Source: Klebsormidium nitens
Taxonomy: Eukaryota; Plantae; Klebsormidiophyceae
Reading direction: 5' to 3'
Length of the DNA: 64,000 nt
Assembly (NCBI GenBank): GCA_000708835.1
Contig: DF236953.1
Location: 1-64,000, forward strand
Below the pieces are notes generated by a model. The model did no database searches. It had not been told where the DNA came from and saw only the letters and a list, made by a program, of their open reading frames with translations. Shown piece by piece: positions 1 to 58,327 of the stretch. How positions within the stretch are numbered: position 1 is the first letter of the stretch; the number at the start of each line of letters is the position of its first letter. A program made the position numbers and the translations under genes.

Positions 1-260
1 ACCGAGTATCCATATTTCTTGTTCAATGAACCTCGTGTGGTCTCTTGTATGAGGACAACTACCCTCTGTGGGAGCGAAATCTTCTTCCCCTGGCACTTTT
101 GAGTCCGAAACAGTTGAGATCCTGCTCGGGCCTCTGCTTGACAGACGCGCCCCTTCTTTGCGTCGATTTCAAGTCGCGTATCCTTCTACAGAGCAAAGGC
201 ATCATTCCCCTTTGCATCATAGGCAGCAATCACTCGAAAGCTTCGTTTCGTGGATTCCAT
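1..260 (-). pseudogene. MC1-like (NCLDV/virophage-type) small basic DNA-binding protein, interrupted by TAG at 188-186, runs off the window start
   Basis: Hand translation of the minus strand from ATG at 260 (absent from the ORF track): MESTKRSFRVIAAYDAKGNDAFAL*KDTRLEIDAKKGRVCQAEARAGSQLFRTQKCQGKKISLPQRVVVLIQETTRGSLNKKYGYS. The KRSFxV...AxxAGSQLFR...IQETTRGSxxKxYxY pattern resembles viral MC1-domain proteins as I recall them. Confidence 0.55.
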
Positions 261-444
261 ATCGGATGGCCTGGTGCACTTCTATGATAGGTTTGTAGAA
301 AATAAGCCCGCCCCCTAATGCATCTCTGACTATGCGGATTCAACAATCTCGGCTGCAAGCAATAATATACAGTGCATATGGTATGAAGCGCACGTGGAGA
401 GACAGTGAAAAAGTGTCAAGTCCCTTTTAAATATCTAGTTATTC

Positions 445-472
445 TGTTGAAAAATCTCGAGATTTGTCAACA
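445..472. other. 28-bp near-perfect palindrome TGTTGAAAAAT-CTCGAG-ATTTGTCAACA in the divergent intergenic region of the viral-like module
   Basis: Read directly. The two 11-bp arms are reverse complements with one mismatch, around a self-complementary 6-bp core. Function unknown. Confidence 0.85.
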
Positions 473-626
473 ATTTTCGGCCCCCCGCACGCAGTTTTAA
501 GAAAATAAGCGTTTAAGAGAGGTTTCGATGTCATTTTATTGCGACCGACCTTTTTGAAATAACTTGTTGCAAAATGGGAGACGTTATAAAATTATTTTCT
601 TGCATCATTGTAGGCGGGTGATAAGT

Positions 627-1505
627 ATGGATGCTCTACGGAAGGTCTTAGCTGATGGGATCAGGACCGAGAGTTCCACAGAGCAGTATCTCAAAGGGAT
701 TCAGCTTCTATGGAACATGGTTTTCGATGATAAAATGCCCGAGGACCCTTCTTGGATAAAGAACAAGGCTCAGAAGATTGTTGCAGCTGTTCTCGAGCGA
801 TATGATAATCCCGGAAGCAGGCGTACTCGCTTAGCCCCTTTTCTTGCTGTTTGTCGCAAACTCGGTCATGCGGAGGCTTATCAAACCTACTATGAGCCGT
901 TTCGGAAGGAAAATAAGGCTCTGAAGGAATCTGCTCAACGAAAAATTGAAACCAAAACCTCGGACGCCACATCAGAGATGACCGTTGAAGAGGTCGAAAC
1001 ATTCGGAAAGAAGCTTGCACGCAAGGTTAGACAGTTGAGTCTCGAAGACATGAATCGAGATCTCACTCCTAAGGAGGTGAAGATCTGTATGTGGCATCTC
1101 GTCCTCGAATGGCATATGCTTCTGAGTAAGGAGCATCGTCGTCGTGTAAAAGTGCACGAGCTTCCAATCTTACAAAAGGGGCAACAGATCGAGGGTGCGA
1201 GCTATTTGCTGCAGACCTCACGACGCAAGGGAGATTACAAACTCGTTCTTGAAGACGGAGTTCGAATCCCTCTAACGAAGATGCTGAGCAAGTATCTTCA
1301 TCGAACCCTTCAATTGATACCTCGAGATTACTTTTTGACTTCGATCACTCAGCCGCAGACGGCTATGACTGCTAGCAATTGGTCGATGTTTATGAATAAG
1401 ATCCAGTATAACGGAAAGCGCTTCAATCCAGATCGACTTTAAGACGTCCGTATCTTACGAAAAATATCTATGAAGAGTAGTAGCAACGAGGCAATTTTGC
1501 GGTGA
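627..1505 (+). pseudogene. Tyrosine-recombinase-like paralog lacking the catalytic Lys loop and the C-terminal His/Tyr; in-frame TAA at 1440-1442
   Basis: Colinear with the downstream YR: SSTEQYLKGI/STVSVYIRQL, WHLVL/DHLIL, EDGVRIPL/KDGVRCLEV, LHRTLQLIPRDYFL/ILRSFNLIPRKHLI. Reading through the TAA gives DVRILRKISMKSSSNEAILR* (ILRKIS ~ LLRHIS), ending at TGA 1503-1505, which overlaps the next ATG. Confidence 0.7.
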
Positions 1506-2548
1506 TGGATTTCAACTTCGAAGCAGAGATACGCAGAAAACTGAAGGTGCAGTCTCCCGAGAAGGTTCTTTGTGGAGCTCCGCCAAACCGATCAGATTCT
1601 ACGGTGTCTGTTTACATTAGACAACTAAAAACCGTGTATTCGGCTGGAGACTTTGGGCCGGACGTGATGAACAGTCTCGACTGGATTGAGGACCATGAAC
1701 ATGTGATTTCAACCATAGAGAGTCTTACATCTCGTGATGGCAAGCTTCTTAAACCTCTGACAAAGAGTAATTATGCGGCCCATTTTGCTATTCTTGCTTC
1801 TGGAGAGACGCAATCAGCGTATTCGAAGTATATGCAGAGGATGAAGCCAACCGAGGAGGAGCTCGATCGTTCTATGCAGAGAAAGACGCCGAAAGAGGTC
1901 GACAATTGGATTCCTTGGTCCGAGCTCTTAGAAAAAGGATCGGAACTCGACGATCAGATCAACCGCTATGTTGTGCCAAAGTTTCACAAGAAGGAACGCT
2001 TGGATCGCCATGATAAGCAGTTGGTTATGGACCATCTCATTCTTGCACTCTATACGATGCCCTTGGGACCTTTGCGGAATGAGTACGCAGAATGCATCTT
2101 TTTCATGAAGGACCACGAAAACGATTGCATTGCGATCAAACCGGGTGACATCAACGTCGTCGAGTTGAACGAAGATCCCAATAAGTGTTTCTTTCACATT
2201 GGTCGACATAAGACCCTCGAAAAAGATGGCGTTCGTTGCCTTGAGGTTCCTGAGGATCTCGTAAAAGTCATACTTAGATCCTTTAATCTGATTCCTCGAA
2301 AACATTTGATCCTTAAGAGGCATTATCTCGTCTGGAAAGATGAACCGATATCGAATTTTACCGTAGTTCTTAACGACCTTGGTCAGCGCCATTTCGGTAG
2401 GAATCTTAGCTGCACTTTGCTTCGACACATCTCACATACTGAACAGAGTCCGAAGCTGATGTCCCGTGGTGAAGTGAGAGCAAAGGCACAATACATGGGC
2501 CATAGCATGAGGACTGCGGATGAGCTCTATAGTAGACGATTTGAATAA
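1505..2548 (+). CDS. Tyrosine recombinase / phage-integrase-family protein, intact, 347 aa, intronless
   Basis: N-terminal core-binding-like helices (SDSTVSVYIRQL), then ordered catalytic motifs PLRNEY (R), GRHKT (K), CTLLRHI (R; the usual HxxR His is replaced), YMGHS (H) and ELYSR (Y nucleophile). Confidence 0.85.
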   Translation: MDFNFEAEIRRKLKVQSPEKVLCGAPPNRSDSTVSVYIRQLKTVYSAGDFGPDVMNSLDWIEDHEHVISTIESLTSRDGKLLKPLTKSNYAAHFAILASGETQSAYSKYMQRMKPTEEELDRSMQRKTPKEVDNWIPWSELLEKGSELDDQINRYVVPKFHKKERLDRHDKQLVMDHLILALYTMPLGPLRNEYAECIFFMKDHENDCIAIKPGDINVVELNEDPNKCFFHIGRHKTLEKDGVRCLEVPEDLVKVILRSFNLIPRKHLILKRHYLVWKDEPISNFTVVLNDLGQRHFGRNLSCTLLRHISHTEQSPKLMSRGEVRAKAQYMGHSMRTADELYSRRFE

Positions 2549-2644
2549 GTGGGCAATTCTCTTCTTTCTACACTTTGTGTGCGTTCTCTGAGAAGCACTT
2601 TTTCTATGTTAGAATTATCAGGAGGCATCAACTGCACTCCAGCC

Positions 2645-2891
2645 ATGGAATCGACGAATCACAATCATGGATCCACCGCGTGTGCTGCTTGTTTGGAAGC
2701 GAGCATCTATAAAGACGACCATCAGGCCAAGAAAAGAGAATATTCAAAGAAGTTACTATCAAGTACACAAGGACGAGATTCTCTTGAAGAAGGCTCTTAA
2801 ACGAATTGCGAAAGGAAGTAAGACAAGCAGACGGACGAGGCAGCGACTTTATGATGCACAGATTGCTCTTCCTTGGATTCGATCGTACTAA
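2645..2891 (+). pseudogene. Small basic viral-type protein (~81 aa) split by a +1 T at 2753-2754
   Basis: Removing one T from AAGAAGTTACTAT joins two ORF-track frames into MESTNHNHGSTACAACLEASIYKDDHQAKKREYSKKYYQVHKDEILLKKALKRIAKGSKTSRRTRQRLYDAQIALPWIRSY*. It has a CxxC and a REYxKKYYxxHKxEI basic helix. Confidence 0.55.
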
Positions 2892-3006
2892 TCAACACGT
2901 CTTTGCAAGCGTGGGCTCCGTCGAGTGCCGCGTTGCATGTCGAACAAATTTTCTGGGATTGAAAAATATAAGGGGGCTTCGGACCTCCTTTGGTCTGTGG
3001 AAAAGC

Positions 3007-5849
3007 ATGGCAACAAACTCGATTGTGAACATGTTAGAAGCGTATGCTCAAGAAGGACTATACGCTGTTCCGGCAAAAGTCAGAGCGACAGACAAAGGAT
3101 CGAAGGAGATTTTGGCAACGATGCCGCATACAAAAGCCAATCACGCAATACGTACAGCATCCGATTGGAGAATGGCGCGGGATCGCATCATGGAAAAGAT
3201 TGAAAAAGAATAATACAACTTCTTGGCAATAAAGACGGGAACCATTTCGGACATCTTTGTGTTTGATATAGACACACGAGACAAACCGGAGAAAGATCTC
3301 CAAGCTGGCATGCCTCTCTGGAAAAGACTGATCGCGGAACACGGGGAACCAGATACTTTAAAAGCCACTTCTGCCAGCGGAGGCCTCCATTATTACTTCT
3401 CGTACGGTGAATCACTCAAAGACGGACTCCAATCAGGAAAGTGTTTTGCTGGAGTGGACTATGAGGGCATGTATTATGGACTCGATGGGCGCGGAGATGG
3501 AGGCATCGTTCTGGCCCCGCCAGGCTCACCTGAGATTGGATTGAATTACACTTGGAGCGCACAACCCTTAAGGACAAACATCCAACCAGCTCCATCATGG
3601 TTGATCCGATTCCTCAACGATTCTGCTGGGAGATCCGCAAACAAGAGTCTCGTGTTGACTTCAAGCGATCGAATTCAAGAGTTGTTAGCAAATGGTGCTG
3701 ATTTCGAGCAGATAAGGGGGCTCGAATCAAGCACCGTCGAAGAAACAATGCGTGTGGAGGTGAATACCAATGACTCACAACGTAGACAAGCACTCGAGCA
3801 CAAGAAGATTGCTGATGCAATGATGCAGCTGTTACAAGACGCTAGACTCGACACGGATGTTCGCTTTTCTGGCAATGTGACCTACCAGGGTCCATATGGT
3901 ATGCTCTACTCATTCATCTGTCATGGTCCTCGAACCTGCATACACATGGTCATCAACACACTGGTAGCAACAATCTGACTCTCGTGAAAAGAGGATGGAC
4001 GGTATTCTATCGATGCTTTGGCTCCGAATGTACCGAGAAGCCTCTTACGGAGCTCGGCAATATCCCGATACCAGTGTCGTTGTTGGATTCGAATCCTGTA
4101 CGTCTACATCCAACTCATGACTGGAGTACCTTTCCAAATAACATCAGAACGCTGTCGCAGGATGCTGTGAAAGCACAAATGAATCTTATCCGGCGTAACG
4201 TGACGCAGCGCTATCGAGGCATGGCTGCAATCTTCTCGGCCATGTATCTCGTCGACGGACGCATCATTGCTGAGGGCAAATGCTTTCACTACTGGAACGG
4301 TCGCAGATGGATAGTCGATAACGCGTTCCATATACAGACCGTCTTCAGTAACCACATGGCTCGTATCATAACCTGGTATTCGAAATGGAGATTGAATGCT
4401 TTCAAGCAGGAGATCTGCGCACGCATGAGAGGCTCTGCAACAGAGCAGAACGTCTCATCAATGCCAGAATTGGTCCTTTCAGATTGGGCATTGAACCCAA
4501 CAAATGAAGAAGAAAGAAAAGCATGTAGCATTGCATGGAGGGTGGTCAACAAAACGTATCCGTTTCCAACAAAGAGAGATCTAGTGGATCTGACACGGGG
4601 TTCCGAGGTTCGTGTATGTCTTGAATTTGTCATGAACTCCTTGCAGGCTCCCCAATCTCTCAGCGAGATGATGGATATTGCCAATCCGTTCTTGTTTGCC
4701 TGTCAGAACGGCGTCATTAATACCGAGACCGGAGAGTTGCTCGCATTTCATCCTGCTCACCTGTGTTCGCGCGCGTCGAAAGCAACTTTTCGTGGAATGC
4801 CAAAGGCCGGAAGCCGATTCGAGAGGTTCCTGCTTGATTGCTTCAACGATGACAGAGAAGTACTCGAATGGTATCAGCTCTTCTGCGGCTATTGTATGAT
4901 GGCAGATACGAGTAAACAATTGTTCCTTGTCAAGCAAGGCAATGGAGCTAATGGAAAATCGTTGACAAAGCTGGCAAATCTCGAAGTTCTAGGCAGTTAC
5001 GCTGTCGTTATGTCAGAAGACTGCATCATTGAGGCTGGTAAACGGTCGGCTGGCGCGGCTTCGAGCCACATCATGGCTCTTCGGGGCGGGCGGCTTGCTG
5101 AGACCGACGAGTCGGGAGAGAAAGCAGTTCTGAATGAGGCCGCAATGAAAGCCCTATCAAGCGGGGGGACGACTACAGGGCGCGAGCTGCATAGCAGACA
5201 AAAAACATTTGAGCTCACCGTGAAAATCGTCCTCAACACGAACTACAAACCTATTCTTCAGAACGTATCCTACTGTGTCACTCGACGCTTGGCACTACTC
5301 CCGATGTTGGTCACTTTCTTACCTCCTGAAAAACTTGATTTTAGCAAACCACGCCAAAAGCTTATCGATACTACTCTTGAAGCATACCTGAAAAGCGACC
5401 AAGGTCGAGATGAAGGTCTATCATGGTACACACAAGGAGCAAAGTGCTATCGTGAACTCAAGCGAACGAATCCCAACACGCTACCACTAATGCGTAGACC
5501 TCGTGTCATGGAAGAAGCTGTTAGAGCATACATCAACGACTCGGACATTGCTAGGCGATGGATCGTCGATTGTCTCGAATTCGAAGATATTCAACCCGAA
5601 GAAAGAGCGACATGGCACTTGGCCGTTGGCGAACGGCTCGGAGAGGTGTTTCGAGCTTGGTTGAAAGAAGAAGACTTGACTAGCTCTCTGTCGGCGACGG
5701 CGCTGAAAAAGCGCATCTTGGAGTATGCTGAAGGCAAAAATCGGGTGGTTGCAGACGGCCGATTCACTGATAGCCAAGTTCAGTCCCAAGGACAGTTTAA
5801 AGGCCTTTTGGGGGTTCGACTGAAATCCGGCTATGAATCTCATGTGTAA
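3007..5849 (+). pseudogene. Primase-helicase fusion: Prim-Pol (AEP) + PrimPol/UL52-type Zn finger + D5_N + SF3 (D5/P4-like) helicase; nonsense at 3211-3213 and frameshift at ~3945
   Basis: ATG 3007 (MATNSIVN) is in frame across the TAA with YNFLAIKTGTISDIFVFDID...TSASGGLHYYF...DGRGDGGIVLAPP (Prim-Pol motifs). After a 1-nt frameshift comes RTCIH/GHQHTGSNN...FYRCFGSEC (Zn finger), then FHYWNGRRW (D5_N), GNGANGKS (Walker A), LAETDE (Walker B) and LNTNYKP (motif C). Confidence 0.85.
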
Positions 5850-5951
5850 GAGTAGGTGAAGACGATTCAAGCAAGCGCTTACATGCAGAGGGGAGCTATA
5901 GACTTTGCAAGCTGATTGCTTGGTAAGATATATTTTCCAGGATTAAGTTCC

Positions 5952-6202
5952 GGGCTTCTGGTCTGCAGACCAAAAGTCTATAAGACCACGATTTCAAGAG
6001 TTTCCAATTTCAGAATTCTCTAGGCACCATGATTGCTATAATTGAAAAGATTTGGAATCCGCGTCTTCTGGGCTTCTGGTGTGCAGACCAAAAGTCTATA
6101 AGACCACGATTTCAAGAGTTTTTGATTTCATAATTCTCTAGGCACCATGATTGCTATATCTGAAAAGATTTGGAATCTGCGTCTTCTGGGCTTCTGGTCT
6201 GC
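5952..6202. repeat. 118-bp tandem repeat, ~2.1 copies
   Basis: GGGCTTCTGGT(C/G)TGC starts at 5952, 6070 and 6188. The two full units differ by only a few substitutions. Confidence 0.95.
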
Positions 6203-6393
6203 GGCCCCATCTAGGCACGGTTATGCCACTGGCACAAGTACCTTTCTCGTTTGCACCAAAGTGATATAGCTTCTTATGATGATAACGACCACACATTATG
6301 CACATCGATGCTGTTGGAACATGCATGCAGCATATGATCAAACGTACAAGTCATGGTAACTTTTCGATTGGTGTCTTTGCTTCATTAGGGTGT

Positions 6394-9300
6394 TTAGTAC
6401 ATCAAGAGTCGTTGCCGTACAGCCGGACTCCACGTGTCCGCTCTGCCCGCAATGCGCAGCTTTGGTTCGTCAACCCGTGCTAGATCGCTATTCCTTTCGC
6501 TGACTAGATTAGCGAGGATGACCATGAACGCTACGAGGCTGCTATACCACGCTTGCGTCTTGAAGGTGACGAGGAACGCGTTGCACGACTCCACTGCCGA
6601 CGTATTGACCCATCGCACAGAGTCGTAGTAGTCTGCACGTAATACGGGGATTGAATTAGTTCATCATAGGAAAGCCTTGAGACATGGCGTTGTAGAAGAA
6701 TGCTGCATAGACATGCACTCTTAGAAGGCAGTCAAAAGTTGCCTCCCTCTTTTTTATAGAAGAGCGAGGGCGTTTTTTACTGAGGCACTTCAAACCCGTT
6801 TTTCTGCAAACGCTATGACTTGGCGCCTTCTTCGACTCAAGAATTGGTACCATCTTACAAATATATCAGGGTCTTACCCGGATTGTAAGAAGGGCCGCAT
6901 TTGTGCGCCTCCGCAGAAGTGCGTTGGAAGTGGAATCTGCAAAAGATGAAGCATGGATTGATAAATAAAAAGGTACAAAGAGTTCACAATTGAAGTGACT
7001 TGCGACGCTTGCATGGCAACAGCGCAGAGGATCATAAAAACTGTATTCAACAAGAGCCGCCACTTGGCTTGCATGATTCTTCACTCACCGATCAACCAAA
7101 AAACGGACTTCTGCAAAGAACGCTGGCTCTCTCCGCATCGCGTAGGCACGCAGCTTGCAGGCGTTGTCGTAGACCAGGTATGAGGGGAGATCTTTCCGAT
7201 TGAGGCGAGTGTACAGAACGGTGAAGGGGTCTCGCGGCGACTCCCCGCGGAGCATGACGTGGAAGCCATAGATGACACAATGAGGGCACGAAAAGACAAA
7301 GCCGCCCTTTGTGTGCCGTTGCAGGCTCTTGTTCTTCTTGATCCCGCTTTCCAGAGCGACCTTGGCATCGAATTCCCCGACGGTAAGCCCGCTCCGACAC
7401 CGATGCTCCTCATCGCGCTCGCGAGACCTACCGAGGTCGTCTTCGAACGGTTCGTATTGCGGAAGGGCGCGTTTCTGCTCCCATCCTGGAATTGGATAGC
7501 AGCCAAGCTCTCGTTGCTCGCGGCAGTAAGGATGGTCCTGGGGAAGAGAGCCGCGCTCCGATCCGTCCGCCTCGAGACCGAGCCTGTCGTTCAACAAGAT
7601 CCGTTCTGGCGGAAGAAGGGCGTACTCGTGCAGTGCTGGAGGGGAAAGGCTTTCGACTCCGGGGAGAAGAGCATTCGCCCGGGCCGCCCAGAAGTCGAAG
7701 GCTTGCTGTTGCTCGAAGTTCAGGGGTTTTGGCTCCCGCTCCAGCCAGACGCAGACATCGAGGCCTTCGATCGCCGACAACGCCCATCCCGCCCGTCCAA
7801 TTCCAAGCCCCATCGCTCCGCGCGCAAACAGTGTCAAACGGTAAAGGTGGTGTAGCACGGGATGGAAGTACCGGGGAAAGCGGTCACCGAAATGGTCTAG
7901 CAGCAGACGCAGGATAGGGGAATGCTCGGCCAGCACGACCCTGTTCTCATCGTTTGCGGCTCCTCCAAGGAGCAGCTTACGGACCACCCCCAAGGCTTTC
8001 CCGTGTTGGATGAGATTCGAGTCGTCTGAGACCGAATATGGGGCACCTAGAGTGTAGAGCAGTTCCGCCCATCTGCCTGGGCAGCGGGGAGGCCATTGGG
8101 GCGCGTCTTGCATCGCTTCTCTCTCGATGCCGTCAAGCAGCTCGAGCACGTCTTTGTTCTTCGACCGAACCTGGCCGACCTGATGAGCCGGAATCTGCCG
8201 GCGCCAGTGCAAGAGCACCGGGTCTGCATCGGCATCGGCTGGATCCTGGGCAAAGCCCGTGACGACTTGCACATCGTCCCTAGCGAGCGCGACCTGCACA
8301 AAGACGCTAGATCAGGTCAGCTGCTCGAAGCGAGCATGCATGAGCACTGCAAATCTTTCTTCCGGATCTAACAAACTGAAATACTACAGTCAAAAGTCGC
8401 CTCCATTCCTCTAGAATATGATGGGCGACTTTTGACTGAACCCGTTTACCAGAGGGATGTGTTGCAACGCGCTGACAATCCGAACAAGGTTGCCGGAGGA
8501 AAAGACCATGCTTGCAACTCGATCAAAGTCGTAGCAGAGCGCTGGCATGTAGCCCTTCCGGCAAATCCTTAGGTAGAAGTATTGCCTTTTGGCAAACATC
8601 CGGCCACCGCAGTCAGAACGGCCCTCCTTCTCTCTATAAAATGAGGGGCGCCTTTTAACTGGCCTCTCTCTAAAATCCGGCCTGCCGCAGCTGAGAGTGG
8701 GCCGGAGTCAAAACGGTCCTTCTTTCTTCTAAGAAATCATTATGGGCGCCTTTTGACCTCTCTCAAATATCCGGCCTACCGCAAGCAAAAAACGGGCCGG
8801 AGTCGAAACGTACCAGAAGCTCCTTGTATTCTCGTGTACTCAGCGTCTTCCCTAGCTTTGGGTCAGCAGCATGGTGTCCGCTGAACTGCGCTAGAAGCGT
8901 CCGAAGCTCGGGTTGATGCAGGAGACGCTTTTTCAGCCCCCCTCCCGAAAGAGACGCCGCCAGGTAGTTACTTCCGGCCTCCATGACTCTCTGTACGTTG
9001 ACTTTATCGGAGCCTTGACTTGGCGCCGTGAAGGGCCGAAGCAGGGCGGCATCGGTTCCGGCAAGCCCGCCCTTCTGACGCGTGCCGTCGGCGCAAGCAA
9101 GCCTCGCAATGCCGTCGCATAGAAGCACCTTCACAAGAAAGATGATCCAGTGCTCTTGAAAGAATGAACTTCATAAATCTTAGGTGCCCACGCTCTAATG
9201 ACGTCAGCAATAAGCGACCGCAAAAAGTTGGTGCCAGAGCTTGGACATTTTGGACACTTGGACACGGCGGCAGGATTGACTCGGGATGTGATGACGTCAT

Positions 9301-12300
9301 CAAAGGTGCCCAAAAATTTCAATGGTGGTTGGAAGAATCAAGTGCCTTCATGGATTGTGGACAAGGGACTTAAGTGATGCAAAACGCACCTCTGGATGTG
9401 GTCCGCAGAGGCTACAACACTCCATGATCTGCCGCCCGCACAGCTTGAAGAAGCCAAGGCTCGCCTTACGCCAACACTCTTCCGACAAGAGGGTCGCGCT
9501 GGGATTGTATTGACGCCGTACCGCACTCCCAGCTGCAATGAGCGGGCTGAAAGCAGCTCCCGATTTCTGAACGTCTCGTAGCAGTATCTGACAAGCGACC
9601 TGCGTGACGACCACCGCGCGTGTCCACGCGTATAGACCGAGCGCCTCTCCATTGAAGTGAACGGTATGCTTCTCAGGGCAGGCGCAGCAATAGATCCGGA
9701 GCTTGACCTGCACAGTAATTGGGTCCAAATGGTGCCCATTATTTACTGACAGCTTTGATTCGAACTGGGTATGTTGCAATCATGTTAGAGTATCAGAAAG
9801 TAGCCTGAAACATTGCACGACTCTTTACACAAATCGTCTGCTTTTGTCTGGTTGAGTATTCTTTATATCAATACTAACTTTACAAATCATTCTGTATGCC
9901 AACGCTCCTATCTTATCAGCCTCTGCAAGAAAGACATAGACTGTAGAGCTATACGCAATGGTCTTTACCTCTTGCGCGACCAATACAAGTCGTGTATTTG
10001 TGCACTCTGCCACAACCCCGACCATCGGGTCCTGCAAGGGGGTGGGCCTCGCGGGCACGGGGCCGAGAGACATTCCGCAGCGCTCAACTCTTCGAAATCC
10101 CGGGCCGTGAGCTCGCTGACTCGAACTGGCCTTTGCAGCAGCAGCACCTCGGGGTCGTGAACCTGCCAGGAGTCCGTGGGGCGAACGAGCTTGGGCACCT
10201 CCAGCTGCACGCCCTCAGCTTCCATGGGCAACACCGTCGCAATCCCGTGGGAGGCACCGTGCGTGCACACATTCGAGGGGCACACGCAGATATTACACAC
10301 CGGAATCGAGAACGCGTTCCGATCCTCGACCTGGAGGGCACTTTCCGTTCCCCGCCCCCTCTCCTCAGCTGCATCCGACTCAGCTTCCCCCGTGCTGCCC
10401 GTTGCAGCATCCGGCTCCTCCGTTTCTGTGCCTTCTGCCGTCCAAAATGATTTGGTTCTCCGTTTGCCCGATCTCGCGCTCGCCTCCCCAATGCCACCGG
10501 AGCTTTCTCCTTGCTCCGATCGAGCTCGCTTTCCGTTCGTTTGTGCAGACGTGCAGCACCTCACTGCGCAGAGCTCCACGTCCACTTCAGCGCCGCCAAA
10601 CACCCTCGGATGCTGCTTGCAGAAGCAGCTCGGCCCTTCGCATGCAGCCCTTTCGTGGCTGCCGACGACTAGCTCCGCGAGTACCCGTCCACGTCAGCGT
10701 CTGGCGCACACTGCCCGCTATGCGCCACGCCGTCACCGCCCCGGCTATCACCTAGCCCGTCCTTCAAAGACGTTTTTGCGAGCTCGAGCTGCCCCTCCGA
10801 AAATGAACTCTTGCTCAATTTGTCCACACCGCTCGGTCCACTCAAAGCTCGCTTCACCCCTTGAATGTGCGAGCAGTCAGCAGTCTTGCTGCATCCGCTC
10901 TTCCTCCCCTCGCAATACCAGCCCATCCGCGCCCCCTCTCCATAGTGGACCATTGTCCTCTGAGGTGATGGCGAACCAACGTTCCAGTACACCCCAAAAA
11001 CCCGCTCCCCGGTCCTGTCGCATGGTATCTCCATCACCCGCGTCCCAATCTGCAGCGATATGGCGCTCGCTAGCCTTGGCGGCTCCAACGTCTGAAGCGC
11101 AAGCTTGTGCACGCAGGGGGCCCGAGCGTACAACCGGCCCCGGTCGCAGGTGCAGCTCAGGTTTCCCAAGGTGTCCCGATGCACCGTCTCGAGCAACGCG
11201 CGCACTTTGCTAGGGCGCCCGAGAGGTTTGGGCCTGGCGGCGTTGTGATTCCCGGTGCTAGCCAGATAGACCGTACTAGCAGAGCCCTGTTCGCCGACAT
11301 TGTACAGAGCGCACTCTCCTGATCGGAGGCCATCGAGATACATCACAGCTTGGTCGACAATGGTCCGACAATCGTCTGCGCTCGACGCTTCGCCACTCCT
11401 TGCGTGAAGTTGCCCCTGCATCCACATCGGAAACGTAGTTAGACATGCTATAAGTAAGCGCTATACAGACATCCAACAATGCTCTTAGAACAAGTTTGGA
11501 ACATCAGCCTGATATGTTCGACCTCTGTTAATGACTTGCTGTTGGTGAAAGACAAAGGCTCCACAATGCTCCGAACCGCGGTGTTATCCATCAGCATAAG
11601 ATCTTTGACTTGTTTTCTGTTACTGTATGGCTTTTCTTGTTGTGCTGACTTGGATCAAACACACATCAATTTTCATGGTGTAAAAAAGCATATGGATAGT
11701 GCTCAATCAAACATTCACAAGCAGATGCAGAGGCTCTTAGGGTTTGAAGATCTGCATTCCTGCTCACCTCCACTTGCGCGCTAGATCTTGCTGTTTCCCC
11801 CGCTTTTCGACCCCGGTTCACTGCTGCTTGCGCTGCAGTCGTTTTGCGGCGCCCGCCCGGCCGTTCCTCCTCTGCCTTCTCCCGCAGGTTGCCAACCTCT
11901 TCGCCCGACAACTTCTTCAGTTGTCTCCATTCCGCCCCTAGTGACTTGCGCTGAAACCAGACCTCAACTGAACCCGCCGAGCCTCGGTTGGTTCTTCCTA
12001 CGGTGATTGTCAGATTGTCAGCACACTGAGTGACAGGACCGAAATGCCGCTTTACGCACTCCAGACAAACAGGCTGGCGCTTTCTCTGACCCGTGGCAAC
12101 TGATTTGGGTGAGGTGATTGCAAAGCCCTTCAGTGCGGCTTAGCTTTTCCGGAATGTGAGTTGGTAGTCTTTTGTCACTAGTGTTTGTCTGCAAAGCGGG
12201 CACTTGGTAGCTAGTGAGTTAGCGGGAATATTTCCGTAGGCATTTGGATCTACAATAATGTTGCCACAGCTAACCTCCCTCTGACTCGCCGGGTGCAAGC

Positions 12301-12352
12301 TATAAGTCGAGGTGTTTGGTCGGGCCACACTGAACCCTGGGGTTGATTGCAT
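6394..12352 (-). mobile_element. KDZ (Kyakuja-Dileera-Zisupton) transposase gene with SWIM and CxC zinc domains; multi-exon and damaged
   Basis: Exons by GT-AG sites: 12352-11768, 11415-9969, 9707-9390, 9128-8814, 8293-7089, 6936-6878, 6632-6394. Motifs: two SWIM-like (CTC...CVH, YCE...CSH), CCACPEKH..FNGE, CSLCGPHPE|VLLCDG (D), FSCPHCVIYGF..GESPRD, YDNACKL (D), VDRFHF...HKC...YNP, NTSAVESCN (E). Lesions: TAA at 12142-12140, frameshift ~10690, and a phase mismatch at the 9969/9707 junction. Termini not found. Confidence 0.85.
8598..8810. repeat. Degenerate tandem repeat (units ~77-94 bp) inside a KDZ intron
   Basis: ATCCGGCC..CCGCA at 8598, 8675 and 8769, with recurring GGGCGCCTTTT and GGCCGGAGTC.AAACG blocks. 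Confidence 0.7.
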
Positions 12353-12540
12353 GTTCCCCGAGCTTCTTCAAGATGGCAGAGGGATGGCCGGATTGCTTGC
12401 TGGTTAGCGCATAGATGTGGTTCTGAGGGTGCGAGATTGGTTGAAACTCGACTCGGATGCGTAGAAGGTCCAGTTGGATATGAAAAAACTGAGAGAATAT
12501 TTGACCTTTTATACTCTGACTTCCGGGCCGACTGGACCAG

Positions 12541-12645
12541 TTTCGGACGCCGTGCAGCCTGCTTACGTGGCCGGTCGCTCCGTTGGCAGGCCTTTTCGGA
12601 CGCCCTATAGCCTGCTTACGTGGTCGGTCGCTCTATTGGCAGGCT
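12541..12645. repeat. 53-bp tandem duplication upstream of the KDZ ATG; each unit has a GCCTGC...GCAGGC hairpin
   Basis: TTTCGGACGCC starts at 12541 and 12594. The units are about 85% identical by eye. Confidence 0.85.
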
Positions 12646-12928
12646 TCTAGAACGGTCCAATATTCGGTTGGCGGTCCGCCGGGTTTCTGTCCTGAGATGG
12701 GTCAGGCTGTTAACCTCCTCGACCGTAAATCGACGCTCGCGGCACCCGGACCGATTCGCTTCCGCGCTCTATATCCAGCAGGGGGTCCCGACCCGAAATT
12801 CCTCTCCGGTACACGATTCGAAATACCGTCATATTGACGGTTTCTTCCGCTAGGGAGACGCGCCGGCCGCTATCGACGCCGTTGATACGCCATCTGGCAC
12901 GCGCGCGCGATCTGGGCCGTAAAATTAA

Positions 12929-13677
12929 GGTGGTAGGACGGTAATTCAGCCAGAAAAGAGGGTTTCTAGGGTTTGAAGGGGCGTAACTTGGTCATAACGT
13001 GGTCAAATCGAGTCCCGTCTTTTGCATCTTTCGGGGGGGACCAAGGAGGCCCCCTCGAGCACTCTGGGACCACCTCGAACTCACTGACGACTTGTCGAGG
13101 AAAGTCTGAAGTTGAGGAAGTTTGAACATTTACCCCCCTACATGAACCCTTGGCCGTCAGAAAAACGAAATGATAGAATTCTCATTGACCCCCCTAAAAC
13201 TGAATCGGGGCAAGCTGGGATGTCTATCGAACGGTTAAATCACAATATTGACGAAAATGTGCACCGTTAATGGTCAAAACTCCCAGCTTATATGCTCAAA
13301 ATGGTTTTTTCTCAGGTTGTTGACCAGGTATGTTCCCCTGGCGGTGCACATTTCCGTCAGATTTTTTTTGGAAAAATGTTTTTGACATCCCAGCTTGCCC
13401 CGAAGGTGATTTCCTCTTGTTCGAAGGAAATTTATCGTGGCAGTTGACAGGCAGAAAATCCAATGGAAATACCCCTTTGAACCAGGTTGTTTGGAGTTGG
13501 CAGGGTTTCTCAGACTGACCCAAACTACTTCGAGGTGGTTAGAGGAGCTTCGAGAGGACCCCGAGGGTGTCTCGAAGCCATTGGAGAAGACGAAACCTGA
13601 TTTGGTTTAGTTTTGAACATTCTATGAACCAGAACGTAAACCAGGGTCAATCCAACCTGAATTACCGTCCTACCACC
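12929..13677. mobile_element. 749-bp non-autonomous DNA transposon (MITE) with perfect 21-bp TIRs and TTAA TSD (Kolobok- or piggyBac-type target)
   Basis: TTAA|GGTGGTAGGACGGTAATTCAG (12929-12949) and CTGAATTACCGTCCTACCACC|TTAA (13657-13677), plus subterminal inverted ACCACCTCGAA/TTCGAGGTGGT. No coding capacity. Confidence 0.92.
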
Positions 13678-14819
13678 TTAATGCCATTCAACAGATGGTG
13701 AACCCGTGTCCATGGCGCCATCTTGATTGTCCGTACAGCTTGGACGTAGTGCGAAGCGGCAGTACGGTCGAAGTGACCATAGGCGATCAGCAAACAACGG
13801 GTATATATCGAGGAAGGTAACCGGCAGGTACATATTCTACCAACACCGTAATAAGATCATCGAAGTTTGAAACCTACAATTTAAGATGGTAAATATTCGG
13901 ACGTTGTGATACATACTTGCATGAGCATTGGCTTATACGATGTCCGGCATAGGCAGGCGGTGTCCGGTACTTTGTCGTCGTGTTATGATACTGAATAGCT
14001 CTACAACGCGCCATCTGGCTGCGACACAGCGGCGATACAGCAGCCGGTCGAGGCGCGCCGGGCTCCGGATCGTACCCGGAAGACTGCTGACCTCATACCT
14101 ATTACGGCGTCGGTAGTCATCATGAAAATTGACGGTAGCTACCATGAGGGACATTTGAGAACTAGGGTTGGGACTTGCATGCAGGTGACTGGCCCGGCGG
14201 ACCGCCCAGCGGGCCTGGCCGCGCGCGCGCCCCTTCACTTCTAGTTCGTCCGGCGCAAGGTTTGTGCAGCCTGCACTCAGGCAGCCGCGGGGACAGAGCT
14301 AGGAGTCGGACTCGGGATCCTGGGCGAAGAACACACGAAGAAAGAAAAGAGAGAGATGAAGAAAAGCGGGATGCTGCATGTGTTAAAACTTCTGTCTTGG
14401 CAAGTCCAGTCTGTTCCCTGTCTGTTCCAGTATTTGATTATGGGTACATGGGCAAATTTGACGGGTTGTCAGCTGAGGCACCAGCAGTCTTTCCCAGCCC
14501 TATCTAAATTGCCTTGTTCGACAGCTTTCAGCTAGTGGAGGTTCGGATTTCAGATACTGCTCAGAAAATTGATTTTCCCCAGTCTTTTTCTTAGCTACCG
14601 GCCTATGTCCATGTTCCGCAAAATGTAGTCAACCTTAGACGGCCTATAGTGGACTATCTCATCGCACCCTCCAGAGCCTGCCCGTCTGGGTTAGTTCAGC
14701 GCCCTGTTGCAAGCAGCAATTAGAGCCTGCAAGAGCTTTGACGACTGTATGAAAACCCCAGTCATAGAAAGCAGGTCGTTATGGCTTTCTTTCGCCCTCA
14801 GCGCGCCGCAGATTGTGCG

Positions 14820-17800
14820 ATGCACAAGTTGCAGGAGCTGTGCCTGTACAAGATCGTGGACAACCTGGACATGCTGGGGTGAGCTGCTAATTTTTATGTA
14901 TAAATCAGAAGCTTTGAAGTCTCAGACAGTGATCGGGCCTTGACCTCAACTGTTTCCCGCATGACCGATCATGGCACAGTTTACCACCACCAACCGCAAG
15001 TGATAAAAATGCACATCAGCTTTTCTCAAAACCCTTCAATGCAAAAGCAGTCGGGGAATGAGTACTAGCGTTGAATCAGTCCTATCGGACATGAAAGACG
15101 AGCCTCGATTGGTCGGCCAACTACTGGTTGAAGTCTGTTGACTTTGCGATTAGGTAAACCCAGGACGAGCCCCAGCATAGTGGTGTGGCCACCATGATTG
15201 CTTATTGTATCTTTGATACATACCGGCATGGTGCACTTGTAGGACGATGCCGAACTCAATCAATGTGGTCGTTGACAAGTTTTTCCATTATGTTTTGTTC
15301 TGATGCTGGGTGTATAGGGCCTTCTTTTGCAAGTCTTCTGAAGCATTTAGTGTCTTCGTCTTTTCACGATAGAAGCTTTCATGGCGGTCTTCTGTCCATC
15401 TTGCAGTTTGACAGCTTGTCTGCACAACCGATTCCTTGCACCATGTCACCTGTTTCGGAAGTAACCTTCTAGAATGCATCAAAGGCGCAAATAAGCATGA
15501 ACTGGCATAAATGCGCAGACAAGCCGAGACGAGCTGTCTACCAGCTTTGAGCGCTTTCTTTGGCAACTCGGACAGAAGGCTTTTGTTCAGATCATTTGGC
15601 AAGTAAAGTGTGGCGCCTTGGGCTTGGCACTTGTTCCTCCTAGTTTCCCTTGTTGGGACCCTCATTCCTTAGCGAAAATGAGACCAGATTTTGTGTGAGC
15701 GTTTCAACAAGGGAATAGGCAGTCAGACCGTCTTATCAGAGCATTTCATGACAACCAGCAGAACTGCGGCCGTTACAATCTGAGGCAAATAATCGGGAGA
15801 ACTCAGGACCGGTGAGGCTGGAACCTGGAGGCGATAGCCTACTCATTGTAAACAGTGTAAATGCTGTCTCAAATCCCGCTATATTGCTGCGATGCAGAGA
15901 CGTTGGGGACACGCCTGCCATCTTCCTTGAGAGGATACTTGCCCACTGCACTTTAGACCAGCTGAAAAGAATCGAGGACGCCTCCAAGGTACTACTTGTG
16001 TCCCTCATCACAAGAAACCCCCTCGAGAGAGAAGCAAGTTGGAAGGAGACTCAGCAACGGGAGATCTAGATGCAGAGCTTTGCGATCTGCTGCGGTCTGT
16101 GCGGTACAAACCTGTCTACTGGGATTTAAACTTGTGCTGCGAGGTTAAATTAGCTCGGAGGTTTTTCCGTTTCAGAGGAGGTCAAGGAGCTAATATTTAA
16201 TTGTCGTCCCGCAGAAAGCAGGAAGTCGGGCCTGATGCCGCACATATTCGTTGACACCTTCAATTCGGGTGACGTGTGGGGGCTTGTTATTTCGCCGGTG
16301 GACAGGAGTCGCTTGACTGTCTCAGCCCTTCTTCCCACTCCGTTAGAAAAATGGCAGCTTGCTGACTGCAAGCTTTCGTCATCCTCCAGGGACGGGACCT
16401 GGAGAGCATCACCAACGAGTTCTGGCACCGCTTCTATCAGAAGAAGTGGGGCGCGGAGGCCACCGGGATCATCGAGAACCGCGTTCAGAAGAAGGGCCTG
16501 CCTCTTCGCTGGCGAGCGCTCTACGACGTGAGCTTTGTGATTGCAGTCTCCTAGATTGTTGGAAAGAGGGTTAGTGGTTACCAAGGAACATTCTCAGGTT
16601 GCTGTGGATTGGTCGAGGCTGTAATTCAAGTCGTATTGTGTCACAGATTCTATCAATACTGGGGATGAGACACGTCAGATATCAGAGTGGCAATAGGTGA
16701 TCTGGATTCGTCGACTACGATTAACAATTGCGGGCTGGTGTAGCTCTTTTGAAAAGCATCATTCCGTTCTTCGTTGAGTCTCGATGGGATGGTCGGGCGT
16801 ATTTCCCTGGTGGCACAAGGCCGCCCTGCACATTGCATCAGCTTATCGCCCAGTCAACTCAAACGTTGTAGTGTGACGTGAGGGTGCTTGGTGTATTGTT
16901 TGATCGAACAAATAAAAGCCTCCTTCTTGACACACCTGAAACCACTTGAGGACGGAGCTAGAGAGAGTATTGCTTGTAGAAGATGCTCAGCTGTCCGCTG
17001 ATACCTCGCACTGTCACTCTAGAAGCTTGAACCAATGCACAAACGGCAGGCTAGGATGCTCAACTCTGCTTCAACCTGGAAGTACAGACTATGATCTTCT
17101 GGAAAGCCCCAACAGACTTCGCCCTTTGTGTGGCATCGGTCCGTGCTGTATCCTTCGAGACTGGTCCCGCCTTCCGTGACGAGGCACGTGAGGCTCGAAT
17201 CAGTACTGACTTCTGGTGGCCTTACTTCCTCATAATTTCGGACGCTTTGGGCACTTTATAAATGTCATTTTTTATTGTCCGCGCAGCACAAAGTGAAGCA
17301 GGAGGAGCAGATCCAGGCCAAGTGCGTCAGCCGGCTGCGGGAGCTCTTCATCAAGGAGAAGAACGGTGAGTCGGTCAGCCGCCTACGGTCAAACCTCCCG
17401 GGTTCAAGCTCTTGGCGGTCGACTTGTGCGTTTGGCTCGACGGGGAGAGTATCTCTATATTTGAAGTCTTTCATTCCGGAGGCTTAAGTAGCCCGTGGAG
17501 TCGTCGAGCGTTTTGCAAAGTCTTGAGTACCGTGAAGCCGGTCCAGAGTCTCCGACGCTTCACCTGGCCGATCGTCAGCCGGCGTGCAGTGATACTTCTC
17601 GATTTCATGTTGACTAAGGGCATGTTGACTAAGGACTGTGCTCGGGGGAAAAACAAAACTAAAAACCTAAACCGGAGAAATGACACGCTCCGCACCCGTA
17701 CCCACCCTAACCCCCAAACCAACAATACCCGTCCCCGGGGCCTTTCCTTAGTCAACATGGCCCTTAGTCATCATGAAATCGAGACAACTCCTGCAGTGTG

Positions 17801-57300: not shown

Positions 57301-58327
57301 TTTCCGCCGGACGCCCGAAACGCCCCACGTGACGTCCGCTCGTCCGTCCGCAAAAGCGCCGCCGCTGGTTGTGAAACCCCCCCGAGTCCCACTCGCCGAC
57401 ACCCCCCCTCCGTCCACCTCCGGGGGGGTCATCCCCGAGGGGGTACGCCTGCCGGACACGGTTCCCCCCGCAACGGAATGGAAGCGGTCCGAGCCCCCCG
57501 CCGCGATTGCGCTGCCGGCGATGAGCAGCCGGGAAGCGGAGGCGCTCGTCCGAAAATGGCACGCGGCGAAAGCGGACGCGCTCGGGCCCCAACATGCGAA
57601 GGGGCGGCTGAGCGACGTCGCGCTCCCCCCCTTGAAAATGCACTGGGCGAAAATTGCGGAGGATGCGCGGCGGGGGGGGCGGTATTGGAACTACAAGTTG
57701 CTAGACGTTGCGGTGGACTCGGCGAAAGTGTGGCGGTCTCAGCGGGGGAGTGAGGAGGAGGCGAGCCTGGAAGTGACGATCGAGGAGGCGGCGGAGCTGG
57801 TGGACACACGTGACGTCAGCGACAACGCGGTCTACTACAGGTGAGCTGACGTCACGCCGCGTCGCCCGCAACTGATTCCCTGGAGGCAATTGCGATGGTT
57901 AGTATATTGCAAGCCGTGACTCGCTGCAAGTCTGCTAGTAACATAACGACAGATCGTGTTGTAGGGTCACCGAAAAATATTGCTTTGCTGTGCTCTGAGA
58001 GGGGGTGCTTTACGGGTCCATTTACGGAAAAATGAGGATGCTTTTTGCTAGCGGTTGTTGTACAATACTCTTCTTCGAATGCTTGACGACAGACAACGGT
58101 TTAGCGTGGTTCAGAATCCTGTGTAGGTGGAAACCTCCAAAAGTGCTTGAAGTACTATATAAAGATTGGGAGGCGTATTTCTTGGGGTTGCTTTCCGTTG
58201 CAAAGATGCCGAAGACTTCCGCGGCATTGACGATCTCGATATTTTTTCCAGCACCTATCGTGCAAGATACTCGTTGAGGCGAGTCGATGGCGATTGGAAG
58301 TTCTGTGAAGGTGGGAAAACAAGGTAG
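51360..58327 (+). CDS. PARC6: Plastid division protein PARC6/CDP1 (ARC6 paralog); apparent +1 frameshift in a C8 run at 56747-56754
   Basis: Exons 51360-51731, 52082-52198, 52655-52795, 53320-53424, 53803-53928, 54555-54899, 55297-55398, 55772-55927, 56461-57840 and 58252-58327. Features: transit-like N-terminus, VPLNYYQILG, AEEGYS, VPWEWVPGLL, AMALAQCSLARDDFE, DTRRSSPPL, a TM segment, and a C-terminal IMS domain KADALGPQH...EEAAELVD...YYSTYRARY...DGDWKFC. These fit PARC6 better than ARC6 as recalled. Confidence 0.85.
54275..54610 (+). repeat. Two intronic echoes of the acceptor plus exon start of PARC6 exon 54555
   Basis: CAGATTGAGCACACCGTGACCGCATGCGG (~54275), GAGATCGAGCACACCTTGACCGAGTGCGG (~54412) and the live CAG|ATTGAGCGCACCTTGACCGAGTGCGG (54555). 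Confidence 0.88.

What the first reader, a model, noticed from the sequence alone, without database searches (positions are those of the whole stretch)
1..6202. Compact virus-like integrative-replicative element (2x YR + primase-helicase + MC1-like) in an alga/plant nuclear genome
Seen: five tightly packed intronless ORFs beside intron-rich host genes, covering integration (YR), replication (Prim-Pol-ZnF-D5 helicase) and probable genome packaging (MC1-like). Known: YR plus D5-like primase-helicase is typical of Polinton-like viruses and virophages such as Sputnik, and of prokaryotic satellites. Inference: this is an endogenised PLV/virophage-like or capsid-less self-replicating element. I do not recognise the exact gene set (dead + live YR pair, AEP Prim-Pol rather than pPolB/TVpol) as a named element in streptophytes.
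Basis: partly seen in the sequence, partly recalled or inferred. Interest (0 to 1): 0.88.

Follow-up and report, generated by a model that had tools for sequence, protein, structure and literature searches.

The report
Transposon carrying its own replication genes
The flagged region is the left half of a decayed copy of a repeated mobile element of at least 13.7 kb in Klebsormidium-type green algae that joins a cut-and-paste (KDZ) transposase gene to a recombinase and a DNA primase-helicase; it has no capsid genes, so it is not an endogenous virus, and I found no published description of it.

Summary
The ORFs are real, but both the boundary and the label are wrong. Window 1-6202 holds a truncated recombinase paralogue, a tyrosine recombinase (YR) and a PrimPol-Zn-D5_N-SF3 primase-helicase. 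It also holds the cut-off start of a small basic protein gene, for which no test gave a likeness to MC1.

The unit does not end at 6202. It runs to a conserved terminal motif at 13705. The "intron-rich host genes" at about 6403-12352 are its own KDZ (Kyakuja-Dileera-Zisupton) transposase gene.

The order YR, primase-helicase, repeat array, KDZ tail-to-tail recurs in every fetched locus that reaches far enough: the window plus 8 distinct loci, 4 of them Klebsormidium nitens scaffolds. One K. nitens copy keeps that order at only 23-47% protein identity. dN/dS between copies is 0.10-0.20 for all four genes.

The window copy is decayed. The primase-helicase has 4 frameshifting indels and 1 stop, and the KDZ gene and two small ORFs are also broken.

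I found no capsid or packaging gene. An intact relative has a host resistance-type (TIR-NB-ARC-LRR) gene about 2.3 kb beyond its left shared border.

Best reading: a composite transposon-replicon, a new variant of cargo-carrying KDZ transposons. The left end and the mobilising enzyme are unresolved.

The parts
1..260 (-). The gene is cut by the window start and contains 1 premature stop.
   Evidence: Homologues sit at the same position in L001, L003, L005, L010 and L012. The predicted fold is mostly beta, followed by a Lys-rich tail. There is no MC1 hit.
627..1442 (+). ORF1, 271 aa, uninterrupted. It is a paralogue of the recombinase that ends before the RH..H..Y catalytic C-terminus.
   Evidence: hhalign of ORF1 alignment A7 against ORF2 alignment A1: probability 94.9%, E 4.5e-8, 230 columns. 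No breaks against L001. dN/dS 0.13-0.19.
1505..2548 (+). ORF2, tyrosine recombinase, uninterrupted from the Met that relatives P0094 and P0095 use.
   Evidence: Alignment A1 conserves Arg (GPLRNE), Lys (HKT), LLRH and MGHS..Y. The top 40 Foldseek PDB hits are all tyrosine recombinases; the best is XerA 5hxy at probability 0.98, E 5e-3, on a low-confidence model. dN/dS 0.10.
2606..2891 (+). Small ORF, 94 aa in the intact relative, function unknown. Broken here by 1 frameshift.
   Evidence: Only a weak PHROG 'DNA binding protein' hit, E 0.008.
2937..5849 (+). Primase-helicase gene (PrimPol, Cys/His cluster, D5_N, SF3 helicase with Walker A). Broken here by 4 frameshifting indels and 1 premature stop.
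   Evidence: Pfam and PHROGs. NCBIfam on P0001 shows P4-family primase_Cterm. The 968-aa intact relative P0001 is 93% identical.
5948..6202 (.). 118-nt tandem repeat, 2.2 copies, containing a short palindrome. Candidate cis-acting site.
   Evidence: Copy number varies among relatives: about 1 in L001, 3 in L010, 2 in L012, 2 in K. nitens L013.
6403..12352 (-). Multi-exon KDZ (Kyakuja-Dileera-Zisupton) transposase gene with a Cys cluster. Broken here: across its three long ORF pieces there are 3 premature stops and 10 frameshifting indels. Nine of those indels fall in one piece that may include intron or linker sequence.
   Evidence: 61 homologues, 12 of them K. nitens proteins. PF18758 KDZ scores 33.3 bits in P0155 against a cut-off of 26.6; CxC4 is weak in P0130. 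K. nitens gene models map to window blocks within 6403-10423. Conserved exon-like blocks appear. Break counts are. dN/dS 0.11-0.14.
12929..13677 (.). Nested 749-bp insertion with perfect 21-nt terminal inverted repeats and TTAA on both sides. It is absent from the L001 copy and is not part of the element proper.
13681..13705 (+). Conserved 25-nt right terminal motif. The element ends at 13705, and the flanks differ between copies beyond it.
   Evidence: Identical in L001 at 17545-17569 and 20 of 25 identical in L003 at 19894-19918; the sequence after it is unrelated in each copy.

Best explanation
Window 1-13705 is a decayed copy, truncated on the left by the window edge, of a composite mobile element family of Klebsormidium-type algae.

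Conserved core, in order:
- a small basic protein gene on the minus strand;
- a truncated recombinase paralogue;
- a tyrosine recombinase;
- a small ORF;
- a PrimPol-Zn-D5_N-SF3 primase-helicase;
- a 118-nt repeat array;
- tail-to-tail, an intron-bearing KDZ transposase gene;
- a conserved terminal motif.

Shown here: the gene set, its order, its multi-copy state with different flanks, purifying selection on all four large genes, and the decay of this copy.

Inferred mechanism:
- The KDZ DDE-type transposase cuts and pastes the whole unit in the chromosome.
- The intronless, lower-GC module is a captured plasmid- or virus-like replicon.
- Its primase-helicase starts replication of an excised copy, perhaps at the repeat array.
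- The recombinase, with its inactive paralogue as a partner, circularises, resolves or re-integrates that copy.
For: Synteny:
- The order YR, primase-helicase, KDZ on the opposite strand is found in the window and in L001, L002, L003/L004, L006, L010/L011 (primase mostly deleted), L012, L013 and L014. That is every fetched locus that extends far enough.
- K. nitens copy L014 keeps the order at 47% (KDZ), about 30% (primase-helicase) and 23% (YR) protein identity.

Different flanks:
- Sequence after the right terminal motif is unrelated in the window, L001 and L003.
- A host TIR-NB-ARC-LRR gene lies left of L001. Host FHA and S6PP genes lie beside L014.

Selection: dN/dS is 0.10-0.20 for ORF1, YR, primase-helicase and KDZ.

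Identities:
- KDZ by Pfam.
- YR by conserved residues and fold.
- Primase-helicase.

Composition: GC is 46.6% in 1-6202, 54.1% in 6203-13705 and 52.6% in the rest of the window.

Precedent: KDZ transposons are known to carry extra genes (PMC12730594).
Against: - The left terminus was not found.
- No terminal inverted repeat pairs with the right end, and no target-site duplication was seen. The hallmarks expected of a Zisupton-type KDZ transposon are therefore unconfirmed.
- Pfam does not hit the window's own KDZ exons. The assignment goes through homologues, only one of which passes the curated cut-off.
- The YR model is low confidence (pLDDT 58), and the His of the HxxR motif is replaced by Thr or Ser.
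- Nothing here shows which enzyme moves the element, that an extrachromosomal form exists, or that any copy is active today.
- Some copies carry further upstream genes, including a UL9-like helicase, whose membership of the unit is unclear.
Confidence: 0.6

Rival explanations
1. The tyrosine recombinase, not the KDZ transposase, moves the unit. On this reading the element is Crypton-like or like an integrative plasmid: it excises as a circle, is replicated by its primase-helicase and re-integrates by site-specific recombination. The KDZ gene is then a long-standing passenger or a second, redundant mobility system.
For: - No terminal inverted repeats or target-site duplication were found, as expected for YR-mediated integration.
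- YR and its paralogue are the only large genes still uninterrupted in the decayed window copy.
- YR plus primase-helicase is the classic pairing of integrative plasmids and satellites (general knowledge).
- About 25 nt beyond the right end is loosely similar between the window and L010.
Against: - The KDZ gene is under the same purifying selection as the others (dN/dS 0.11-0.14) and is retained in all lineages, including the most divergent. That is hard to explain for a mere passenger.
- Right flanks of the window, L001 and L003 share no attachment-like site.
- No tRNA gene lies in the window.
Confidence: 0.2
2. One reading: an endogenised Polinton-like virus or virophage whose capsid module lies outside the window, or a capsid-less derivative of one.
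For: - YR plus a D5-type primase-helicase occurs in PLVs and virophages (PMC4642659, PMC8547959).
- The module is intronless and lower in GC.
- Extended copies carry a UL9-like SF2 helicase and several ORFs without any match. I could not fold these.
Against: - No capsid, penton, packaging ATPase or protease hit in any copy.
- In intact L001, no unassigned ORF of capsid size lies between the leftmost border shared with other copies and the right terminus. A host TIR-NB-ARC-LRR gene lies about 2.3 kb beyond that left border.
- No relative was found in IMG/VR.
- The nearest relatives of the primase-helicase outside the family are bacterial and phage P4-type primases at 22-32% identity.
- The conserved partner gene is a transposase.
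Confidence: 0.07
3. Chance adjacency: a YR/primase element once landed beside a KDZ transposon, and the pair was later spread by segmental duplication rather than by moving as an element.
For: - The two halves differ in GC and in intron content.
- A KDZ fragment occurs without the module in L015.
Against: - Order and orientation are kept at 23-47% protein identity.
- Flanks differ sharply at a conserved terminal motif.
- All four genes are under purifying selection.
- Many copies sit on different scaffolds.
Confidence: 0.08

Closest known systems
KDZ (Kyakuja-Dileera-Zisupton) DNA transposons, including the cargo-carrying fungal ones with TET/JBP genes
   Same: Same transposase superfamily (PF18758, with a CxC-type Cys cluster). 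Passenger genes travelling with a KDZ transposase are documented in fungi (PMC12730594). Kyakuja elements exist in green algae: Tcr1 of Chlamydomonas (PMC9940879).
   Different: The cargo here is a recombination and replication module (YR, YR paralogue, primase-helicase). I found no report of that for KDZ elements. The inverted repeats and 8-bp duplications known for Zisupton were not found.
Teratorn of medaka (piggyBac transposon fused with a herpesvirus); cited from my own knowledge, not from a tool
   Same: A cut-and-paste transposase permanently joined to a virus-like replication gene set and propagated as one unit.
   Different: Teratorn is about 180 kb, keeps capsid and packaging genes, and uses a piggyBac transposase. 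This element is about 13-20 kb, has no capsid genes, and has a KDZ transposase plus a YR.
Giant repeats of Amoebidium with tyrosine-recombinase genes flanked by a Plavaka transposase (PMC11244446)
   Same: Intron-poor YR genes are associated with a transposase of the type first described alongside KDZ elements. They are repetitive and look foreign.
   Different: A different transposase group (Plavaka), tandem gene clusters of up to 50 kb, and no primase-helicase reported in the passage I read.
Polinton-like viruses and virophages
   Same: An integrase (YR in some) plus a D5-type primase-helicase; integration into protist and algal genomes (PMC4642659, PMC8547959, PMC10120064).
   Different: No capsid, penton, packaging ATPase or protease. 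A DDE-type transposase gene with introns is present. No relative in IMG/VR.
Cryptons (YR-only eukaryotic DNA transposons)
   Same: A eukaryotic DNA element encoding a tyrosine recombinase without reverse transcriptase; no inverted repeats seen.
   Different: Cryptons encode only the YR (general knowledge). This unit also has a primase-helicase and a KDZ transposase. The YR hits no Pfam family, so no family link was shown.
Prokaryotic integrative plasmids and satellites with a YR integrase plus a P4-type primase-helicase
   Same: The same two-gene logic. The helicase half is most similar to P4-family phage and plasmid primases (TIGR01613, E 5e-31; phrog_1156; phage hits at 22-28% identity).
   Different: The host is a eukaryotic nucleus, identity is low, and the module is joined to a eukaryotic transposase.

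Membership tests
KDZ transposon | KDZ transposase domain (PF18758) | tested here: met
   P0155 is 71% identical to the L001 exon and maps to window 7627-6989. It scores 33.3 bits against a cut-off of 26.6. P0114, P0131 and P0142 score below the cut-off. The window's own exons give no Pfam hit, so membership rests on homologues.
KDZ transposon | CxC-type cysteine cluster upstream of the catalytic domain | tested here: inconclusive
   CxC4 (PF18717) in P0130 scores 21.4 bits, below the 26.9 cut-off. That region maps to window exons within 9387-10423. A CxC..CxH pattern is visible in the L001 529-aa piece.
KDZ transposon | Terminal inverted repeats and target-site duplication (8 bp in Zisupton, PMC12730594) | tested here: inconclusive
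   The right end is defined at 13705. The left end is unresolved and lies off the window. No inverted partner and no duplicated flank were found in L001 or L003.
Tyrosine recombinase | Catalytic residues R, K, HxxR, H/W, Y in order | tested here: met
   Alignment A1 conserves R (GPLRNE), K (HKT), R-H (LLRH), H (MGHS) and Y. The His of HxxR is Thr or Ser. That is five of six residues.
Tyrosine recombinase | Two-domain YR fold | tested here: inconclusive
   The top 40 Foldseek PDB hits are all YRs (XerA, XerH, Cre, integrases; probability up to 0.98). However, the best E-value is 5e-3, TM-scores are 0.3-0.4 and the model pLDDT is 58. No Pfam or PDB sequence hit.
AEP primase - D5/SF3 helicase | Prim-Pol, D5_N and an SF3 NTPase with Walker A | tested here: met
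   PF09250 E 1.5e-13 and PF08706 E 1.8e-11. TIGR01613 E 5.1e-31. Walker A and a conserved Cys/His cluster in alignment A2.
Polinton-like virus / virophage | Double-jelly-roll major capsid protein and penton | tested here: not met
   No capsid family hit in any copy. In intact L001, all ORFs of 250 aa or more inside the unit are accounted for as YR-type genes, primase-helicase or KDZ. Caveat: sequence profiles can miss PLV capsids, and the unknown ORFs of extended copies could not be folded.
Polinton-like virus / virophage | A32/FtsK-type packaging ATPase and maturation protease | tested here: not met
   None found by Pfam, PHROGs or NCBIfam.
Crypton | YR is the only enzyme of the element | tested here: not met
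   A primase-helicase and a KDZ transposase are conserved partners.
MC1 chromatin protein (the protein meant is Methanosarcina MC1) | MC1 sequence family or fold | tested here: not met
   No Pfam hit at E up to 0.1. A profile of 5 homologues finds nothing relevant in PDB sequences. Model m807cadf97555 (pLDDT 60, mostly beta) has no PDB match better than E 0.3. The low model confidence limits the fold test.

The most novel reading that the evidence does not exclude
This is a previously undescribed lineage of eukaryotic 'transposon-replicons'. A DDE (KDZ) transposon has for a long time carried its own replication initiator (primase-helicase, plus a UL9-like origin-binding helicase in some copies) and a tyrosine recombinase pair. 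It would then alternate between a chromosomal state and a self-replicating circular state without any capsid, as a nuclear plasmid-transposon hybrid in a close algal relative of land plants.
Probability: 0.3. Interest if true: 0.8.

Novelty: new variant of a known kind. Interest (0 to 1): 0.6.

Why it matters
Eukaryotic cut-and-paste transposons are normally thought to rely on host replication, and self-replicating elements such as Polintons and PLVs are virus-derived. This would be a KDZ transposon lineage that has kept a primase-helicase and a recombinase under purifying selection across deep divergence. If confirmed, it is a new example of a transposon fused with a plasmid- or virus-like replicon, comparable in logic to Teratorn. 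It occurs in Klebsormidium, a streptophyte alga used to study plant terrestrialisation.

It also has a practical bearing. Such units can be mistaken for endogenous viruses or for host genes. The K. nitens annotation calls their products hypothetical proteins.

Tried and rejected
1. Direct sequence assignment of ORF1, ORF2 and the small proteins with Pfam, PHROGs, NCBIfam and PDB sequences gave nothing.
2. The metagenome scan with the primase alignment returned only three distant loci. They were not used further.
3. The IMG/VR scan found no relative.
I did not resend those sequences. I searched the longer uninterrupted window piece instead and folded the relatives that search returned.
5. The search for the left terminus failed on three counts. 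No inverted copy of the right end was found. No duplicated right-flank word was found. Alignment of left regions shows only an array of degenerate repeats.
6. The look-up of the window's own ORF1, to recover upstream DNA and the source record, found nothing on record.
7. There are no tRNA genes in the window and no Rfam family in 1-14000.
8. NCLDV origin is rejected. Gallot-Lavallee and Blanc list no D5 gene among the giant-virus-like genes of K. flaccidum (PMC5294986), and the nearest outside relatives are P4-type primases.
9. A joined (spliced) model of the KDZ gene was not built. Exons and ORF pieces were searched one by one by reference.

- I used them in no call and for no conclusion.
- My first notebook entry lists the bounds of ORF pieces of the broken primase gene, which bracket breaks. 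Some call references to pieces do the same.

Full report
**1. What is in the window**

The + strand of window 560-5849 is filled with closely packed ORFs.
- Pfam finds Prim-Pol (E 1.5e-13) and D5_N (E 1.8e-11).
- PHROGs finds phage DNA-primase families (best E 7.9e-41).
- A 118-nt tandem repeat of 2.2 copies lies at 5948-6202.
- GC is 46.6% in 1-6202, 54.1% in 6203-13705 and 52.6% in the rest of the window.

They are not all whole, and 6202 is not an end.

**2. Relatives and the true extent**

A search with the helicase part found eight close relatives. They include an intact 968-aa protein, P0001 (93% identity, from a JGI metagenome), and Klebsormidium nitens KFL_011090010 (67%).

The contig of P0001 (L001) is collinear with the window from window 1 to 13705 at 84-91% nucleotide identity. 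That is far beyond 6202.

The same arrangement recurs in these loci:
- K. nitens scaffolds DF238058.1 (L002), DF237433.1 (L013) and DF237177.1 (L014);
- metagenome contigs L003/L004, L006, L010/L011 and L012.

In every fetched locus that reaches far enough, the primase-helicase gene is followed, tail to tail, by the same minus-strand gene. L005 ends too early to tell. L015 holds a fragment of that gene alone.

**3. The neighbouring 'host genes' are a KDZ transposase**

- The minus-strand gene shows exon-like conserved blocks.
- It has 61 homologues, 12 of them K. nitens proteins.
- One homologue passes the Pfam cut-off for the Kyakuja-Dileera-Zisupton transposase domain (P0155, 33.3 against 26.6 bits). 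Three more score just below it. One shows the KDZ-associated CxC4 cluster weakly.
- K. nitens gene models map these regions to window blocks within 6403-10423. The KDZ domain falls at about 7627-6989. Further 5' ORF pieces reach 12352.
- The window's own exons give no Pfam hit, so the assignment rests on homologues.
- I did not build a joined spliced model. Pieces were searched apart.

**4. The right end**

A 25-nt motif ending at window 13705 is identical in L001 and 20 of 25 identical in the divergent L003. After it the three sequences are unrelated. Just before it, the window copy carries a nested 749-bp insertion (12929-13677) with 21-nt inverted repeats and TTAA on both sides. L001 lacks this insertion.

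**5. The left end is not resolved**

- The window begins inside the leftmost conserved gene.
- Across copies, similarity starts at the stop-codon end of that gene, at about L001 4742.
- L001 and L012 share a further array of degenerate repeats of about 200 bp. Each unit carries a 17-nt motif.
- Left of that array, L001 has a host TIR-NB-ARC-LRR gene.
- In L003, L006 and L010 the space to the left holds a UL9-like (Herpes_ori_bp) SF2 helicase spread over several ORFs, plus unassigned ORFs. Whether these belong to a longer form of the element is open.
- No inverted repeat pairing with the right end and no target duplication was found.

**6. The recombinase pair**

ORF2 belongs to a narrow family of 17 proteins with no Pfam domain.
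- Its alignment conserves Arg, Lys, Arg-His, His and Tyr in the order of tyrosine recombinases. Thr or Ser stands in place of the first His of HxxR.
- A low-confidence AlphaFold model (pLDDT 58) finds only tyrosine recombinases among its top 40 PDB matches. The best is XerA at probability 0.98, E 5e-3.
- I accept it as a YR, with moderate support.

ORF1 aligns to ORF2 over 230 columns (hhalign 94.9%, E 4.5e-8). It ends before the region that holds Arg-His, His and Tyr. It is conserved in all copies at dN/dS 0.13-0.19. 'Dead plus live YR pair' is therefore a fair description.

**7. The 'MC1-like' protein**

- It is a 165-aa protein in relatives, encoded on the minus strand. Only its first 86 codons lie in the window.
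- There is no MC1 hit in Pfam.
- A profile of five homologues finds nothing relevant in PDB sequences.
- A model built from relatives returned by a search of the window piece is mostly beta with a Lys-rich tail. It has no PDB match better than E 0.3.
- A small basic, possibly DNA-binding protein is a reasonable guess. MC1 is not supported.

**8. State of this copy**

Breaks are counted against the intact L001 copy.

| Gene | State in the window |
|---|---|
| ORF1 | no breaks |
| ORF2 (YR) | uninterrupted from the Met that other relatives use |
| Small ORF | 1 frameshift |
| Primase-helicase | 4 frameshifting indels, 1 premature stop |
| KDZ 413-aa piece | 1 frameshifting indel, 1 stop |
| KDZ 529-aa piece | 9 frameshifting indels (this piece may include intron or linker sequence) |
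| KDZ 252-aa piece | 2 stops |
| Small basic protein gene | 1 stop, and cut by the window edge |

Between copies, dN/dS is 0.10-0.20 for ORF1, YR, primase-helicase and KDZ. The family evolved under protein-level constraint, and the decay of this copy is recent.

**9. Why one element and not two**

K. nitens copy L014 keeps KDZ, then primase-helicase and YR on the other strand, at 47%, about 30% and 23% protein identity to the window-type proteins. It sits beside ordinary host genes. Chance adjacency or segmental duplication does not explain that. Nor does it explain the sharp, motif-marked right border with unrelated flanks.

**10. Why not a PLV or virophage**

- No capsid, penton, packaging ATPase or protease was detected in any copy.
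- In L001 no unassigned ORF of capsid size lies inside the unit.
- IMG/VR holds no relative.
- The nearest relatives of the primase-helicase outside the family are bacterial and phage P4-type primases at 22-32% identity.
- Caveat: profile searches can miss PLV capsids, and I could not fold the unknown ORFs of the extended copies.

**11. Mechanism (inferred)**

- The KDZ transposase moves the whole unit.
- The intronless, lower-GC module is a captured replicon.
- Its primase-helicase, perhaps acting at the conserved repeat array of variable copy number, would replicate an excised copy.
- Its YR pair would circularise, resolve or re-integrate that copy.
- The main rival is that the YR is the mobilising enzyme. 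I cannot decide between the two without the left end.

**12. Literature**

I found no description of a KDZ element with a YR and a primase-helicase, nor of this element in Klebsormidium. Related facts:
- KDZ transposons carry TET/JBP cargo in fungi, and Zisupton makes 8-bp duplications (PMC12730594).
- Tcr1 of Chlamydomonas is a Kyakuja element (PMC9940879).
- Amoebidium has giant repeats of YR genes flanked by a Plavaka transposase (PMC11244446).
- Giant-virus-like genes reported for K. flaccidum do not include D5 (PMC5294986).

**13. Host**

The closest named proteins are all from K. nitens. The window also holds an ARC6-like plastid-division domain ORF. The window's own ORF1 is not on record in the contig index, so the exact species is unknown.

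**14. Slips and refusals**

Noticed in passing
window 12929-13677: Nested 749-bp non-coding insertion with perfect 21-nt terminal inverted repeats and TTAA on both sides. It is absent from the otherwise collinear L001 copy and looks like a small non-autonomous DNA transposon.
   Followed up: partly
window 6730-6746 and 8388-8404 (minus strand); L001 3628, 4256, 4437, 4661 (plus strand): A 17-nt motif, often preceded by a TATA-like box and in L001 and L012 by a TGACGTGG box, is repeated in the left-end region. It recurs inverted inside introns of the KDZ gene. It is far too frequent for chance and is confined to the element. Its role is unknown; it could be a promoter unit or a protein-binding site.
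   Followed up: partly
window 5948-6202; L010 11885-12226; L012 5119-5327; L013 3289-3610: The 118-nt repeat after the primase-helicase gene varies from about 1 to 3 copies between element copies. It contains a short palindrome and is recognisable even in K. nitens copies whose coding DNA is only about 70% identical.
   Followed up: partly
L003 2447-4680, L006 912-3017, L010 5254-5916: Three copies carry a UL9-like (Herpes_ori_bp, PF02399) SF2 helicase 3-4 kb left of the core, spread over several ORFs, plus unassigned ORFs. It may be a second replication gene of a longer form of the element. L001 and L012 lack it.
   Followed up: partly
L010 10897-10904 and 18627-18708: This copy has an internal deletion of about 2.6 kb that removes the end of the YR gene, the small ORF and most of the primase-helicase. 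An inverted 82-nt copy of the right terminus abuts its truncated KDZ gene.
   Followed up: no
L013 11827-12898: On K. nitens scaffold DF237433.1, a second gene model with Prim-Pol and D5_N domains (1101 aa) starts about 2 kb beyond the first copy. This suggests clustered or nested copies.
   Followed up: no
L001 1-2421: The left neighbour of the intact relative is a TIR-NB-ARC-LRR gene, that is, a plant-type immune-receptor architecture in a Klebsormidium-like genome.
   Followed up: no
window 26060-28879 (minus strand): A 939-aa open frame rich in Lys, Glu, Gly and Ser lies in a stretch with strong strand skews (GC skew down to -0.40, AT skew -0.43). It has no Pfam hit and is probably a low-complexity nuclear protein exon.
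   Followed up: no
window 56918-57844: This ORF carries an ARC6-like IMS domain (E 7e-18), a plastid-division protein type. It fits a green-lineage nuclear genome.
   Followed up: no
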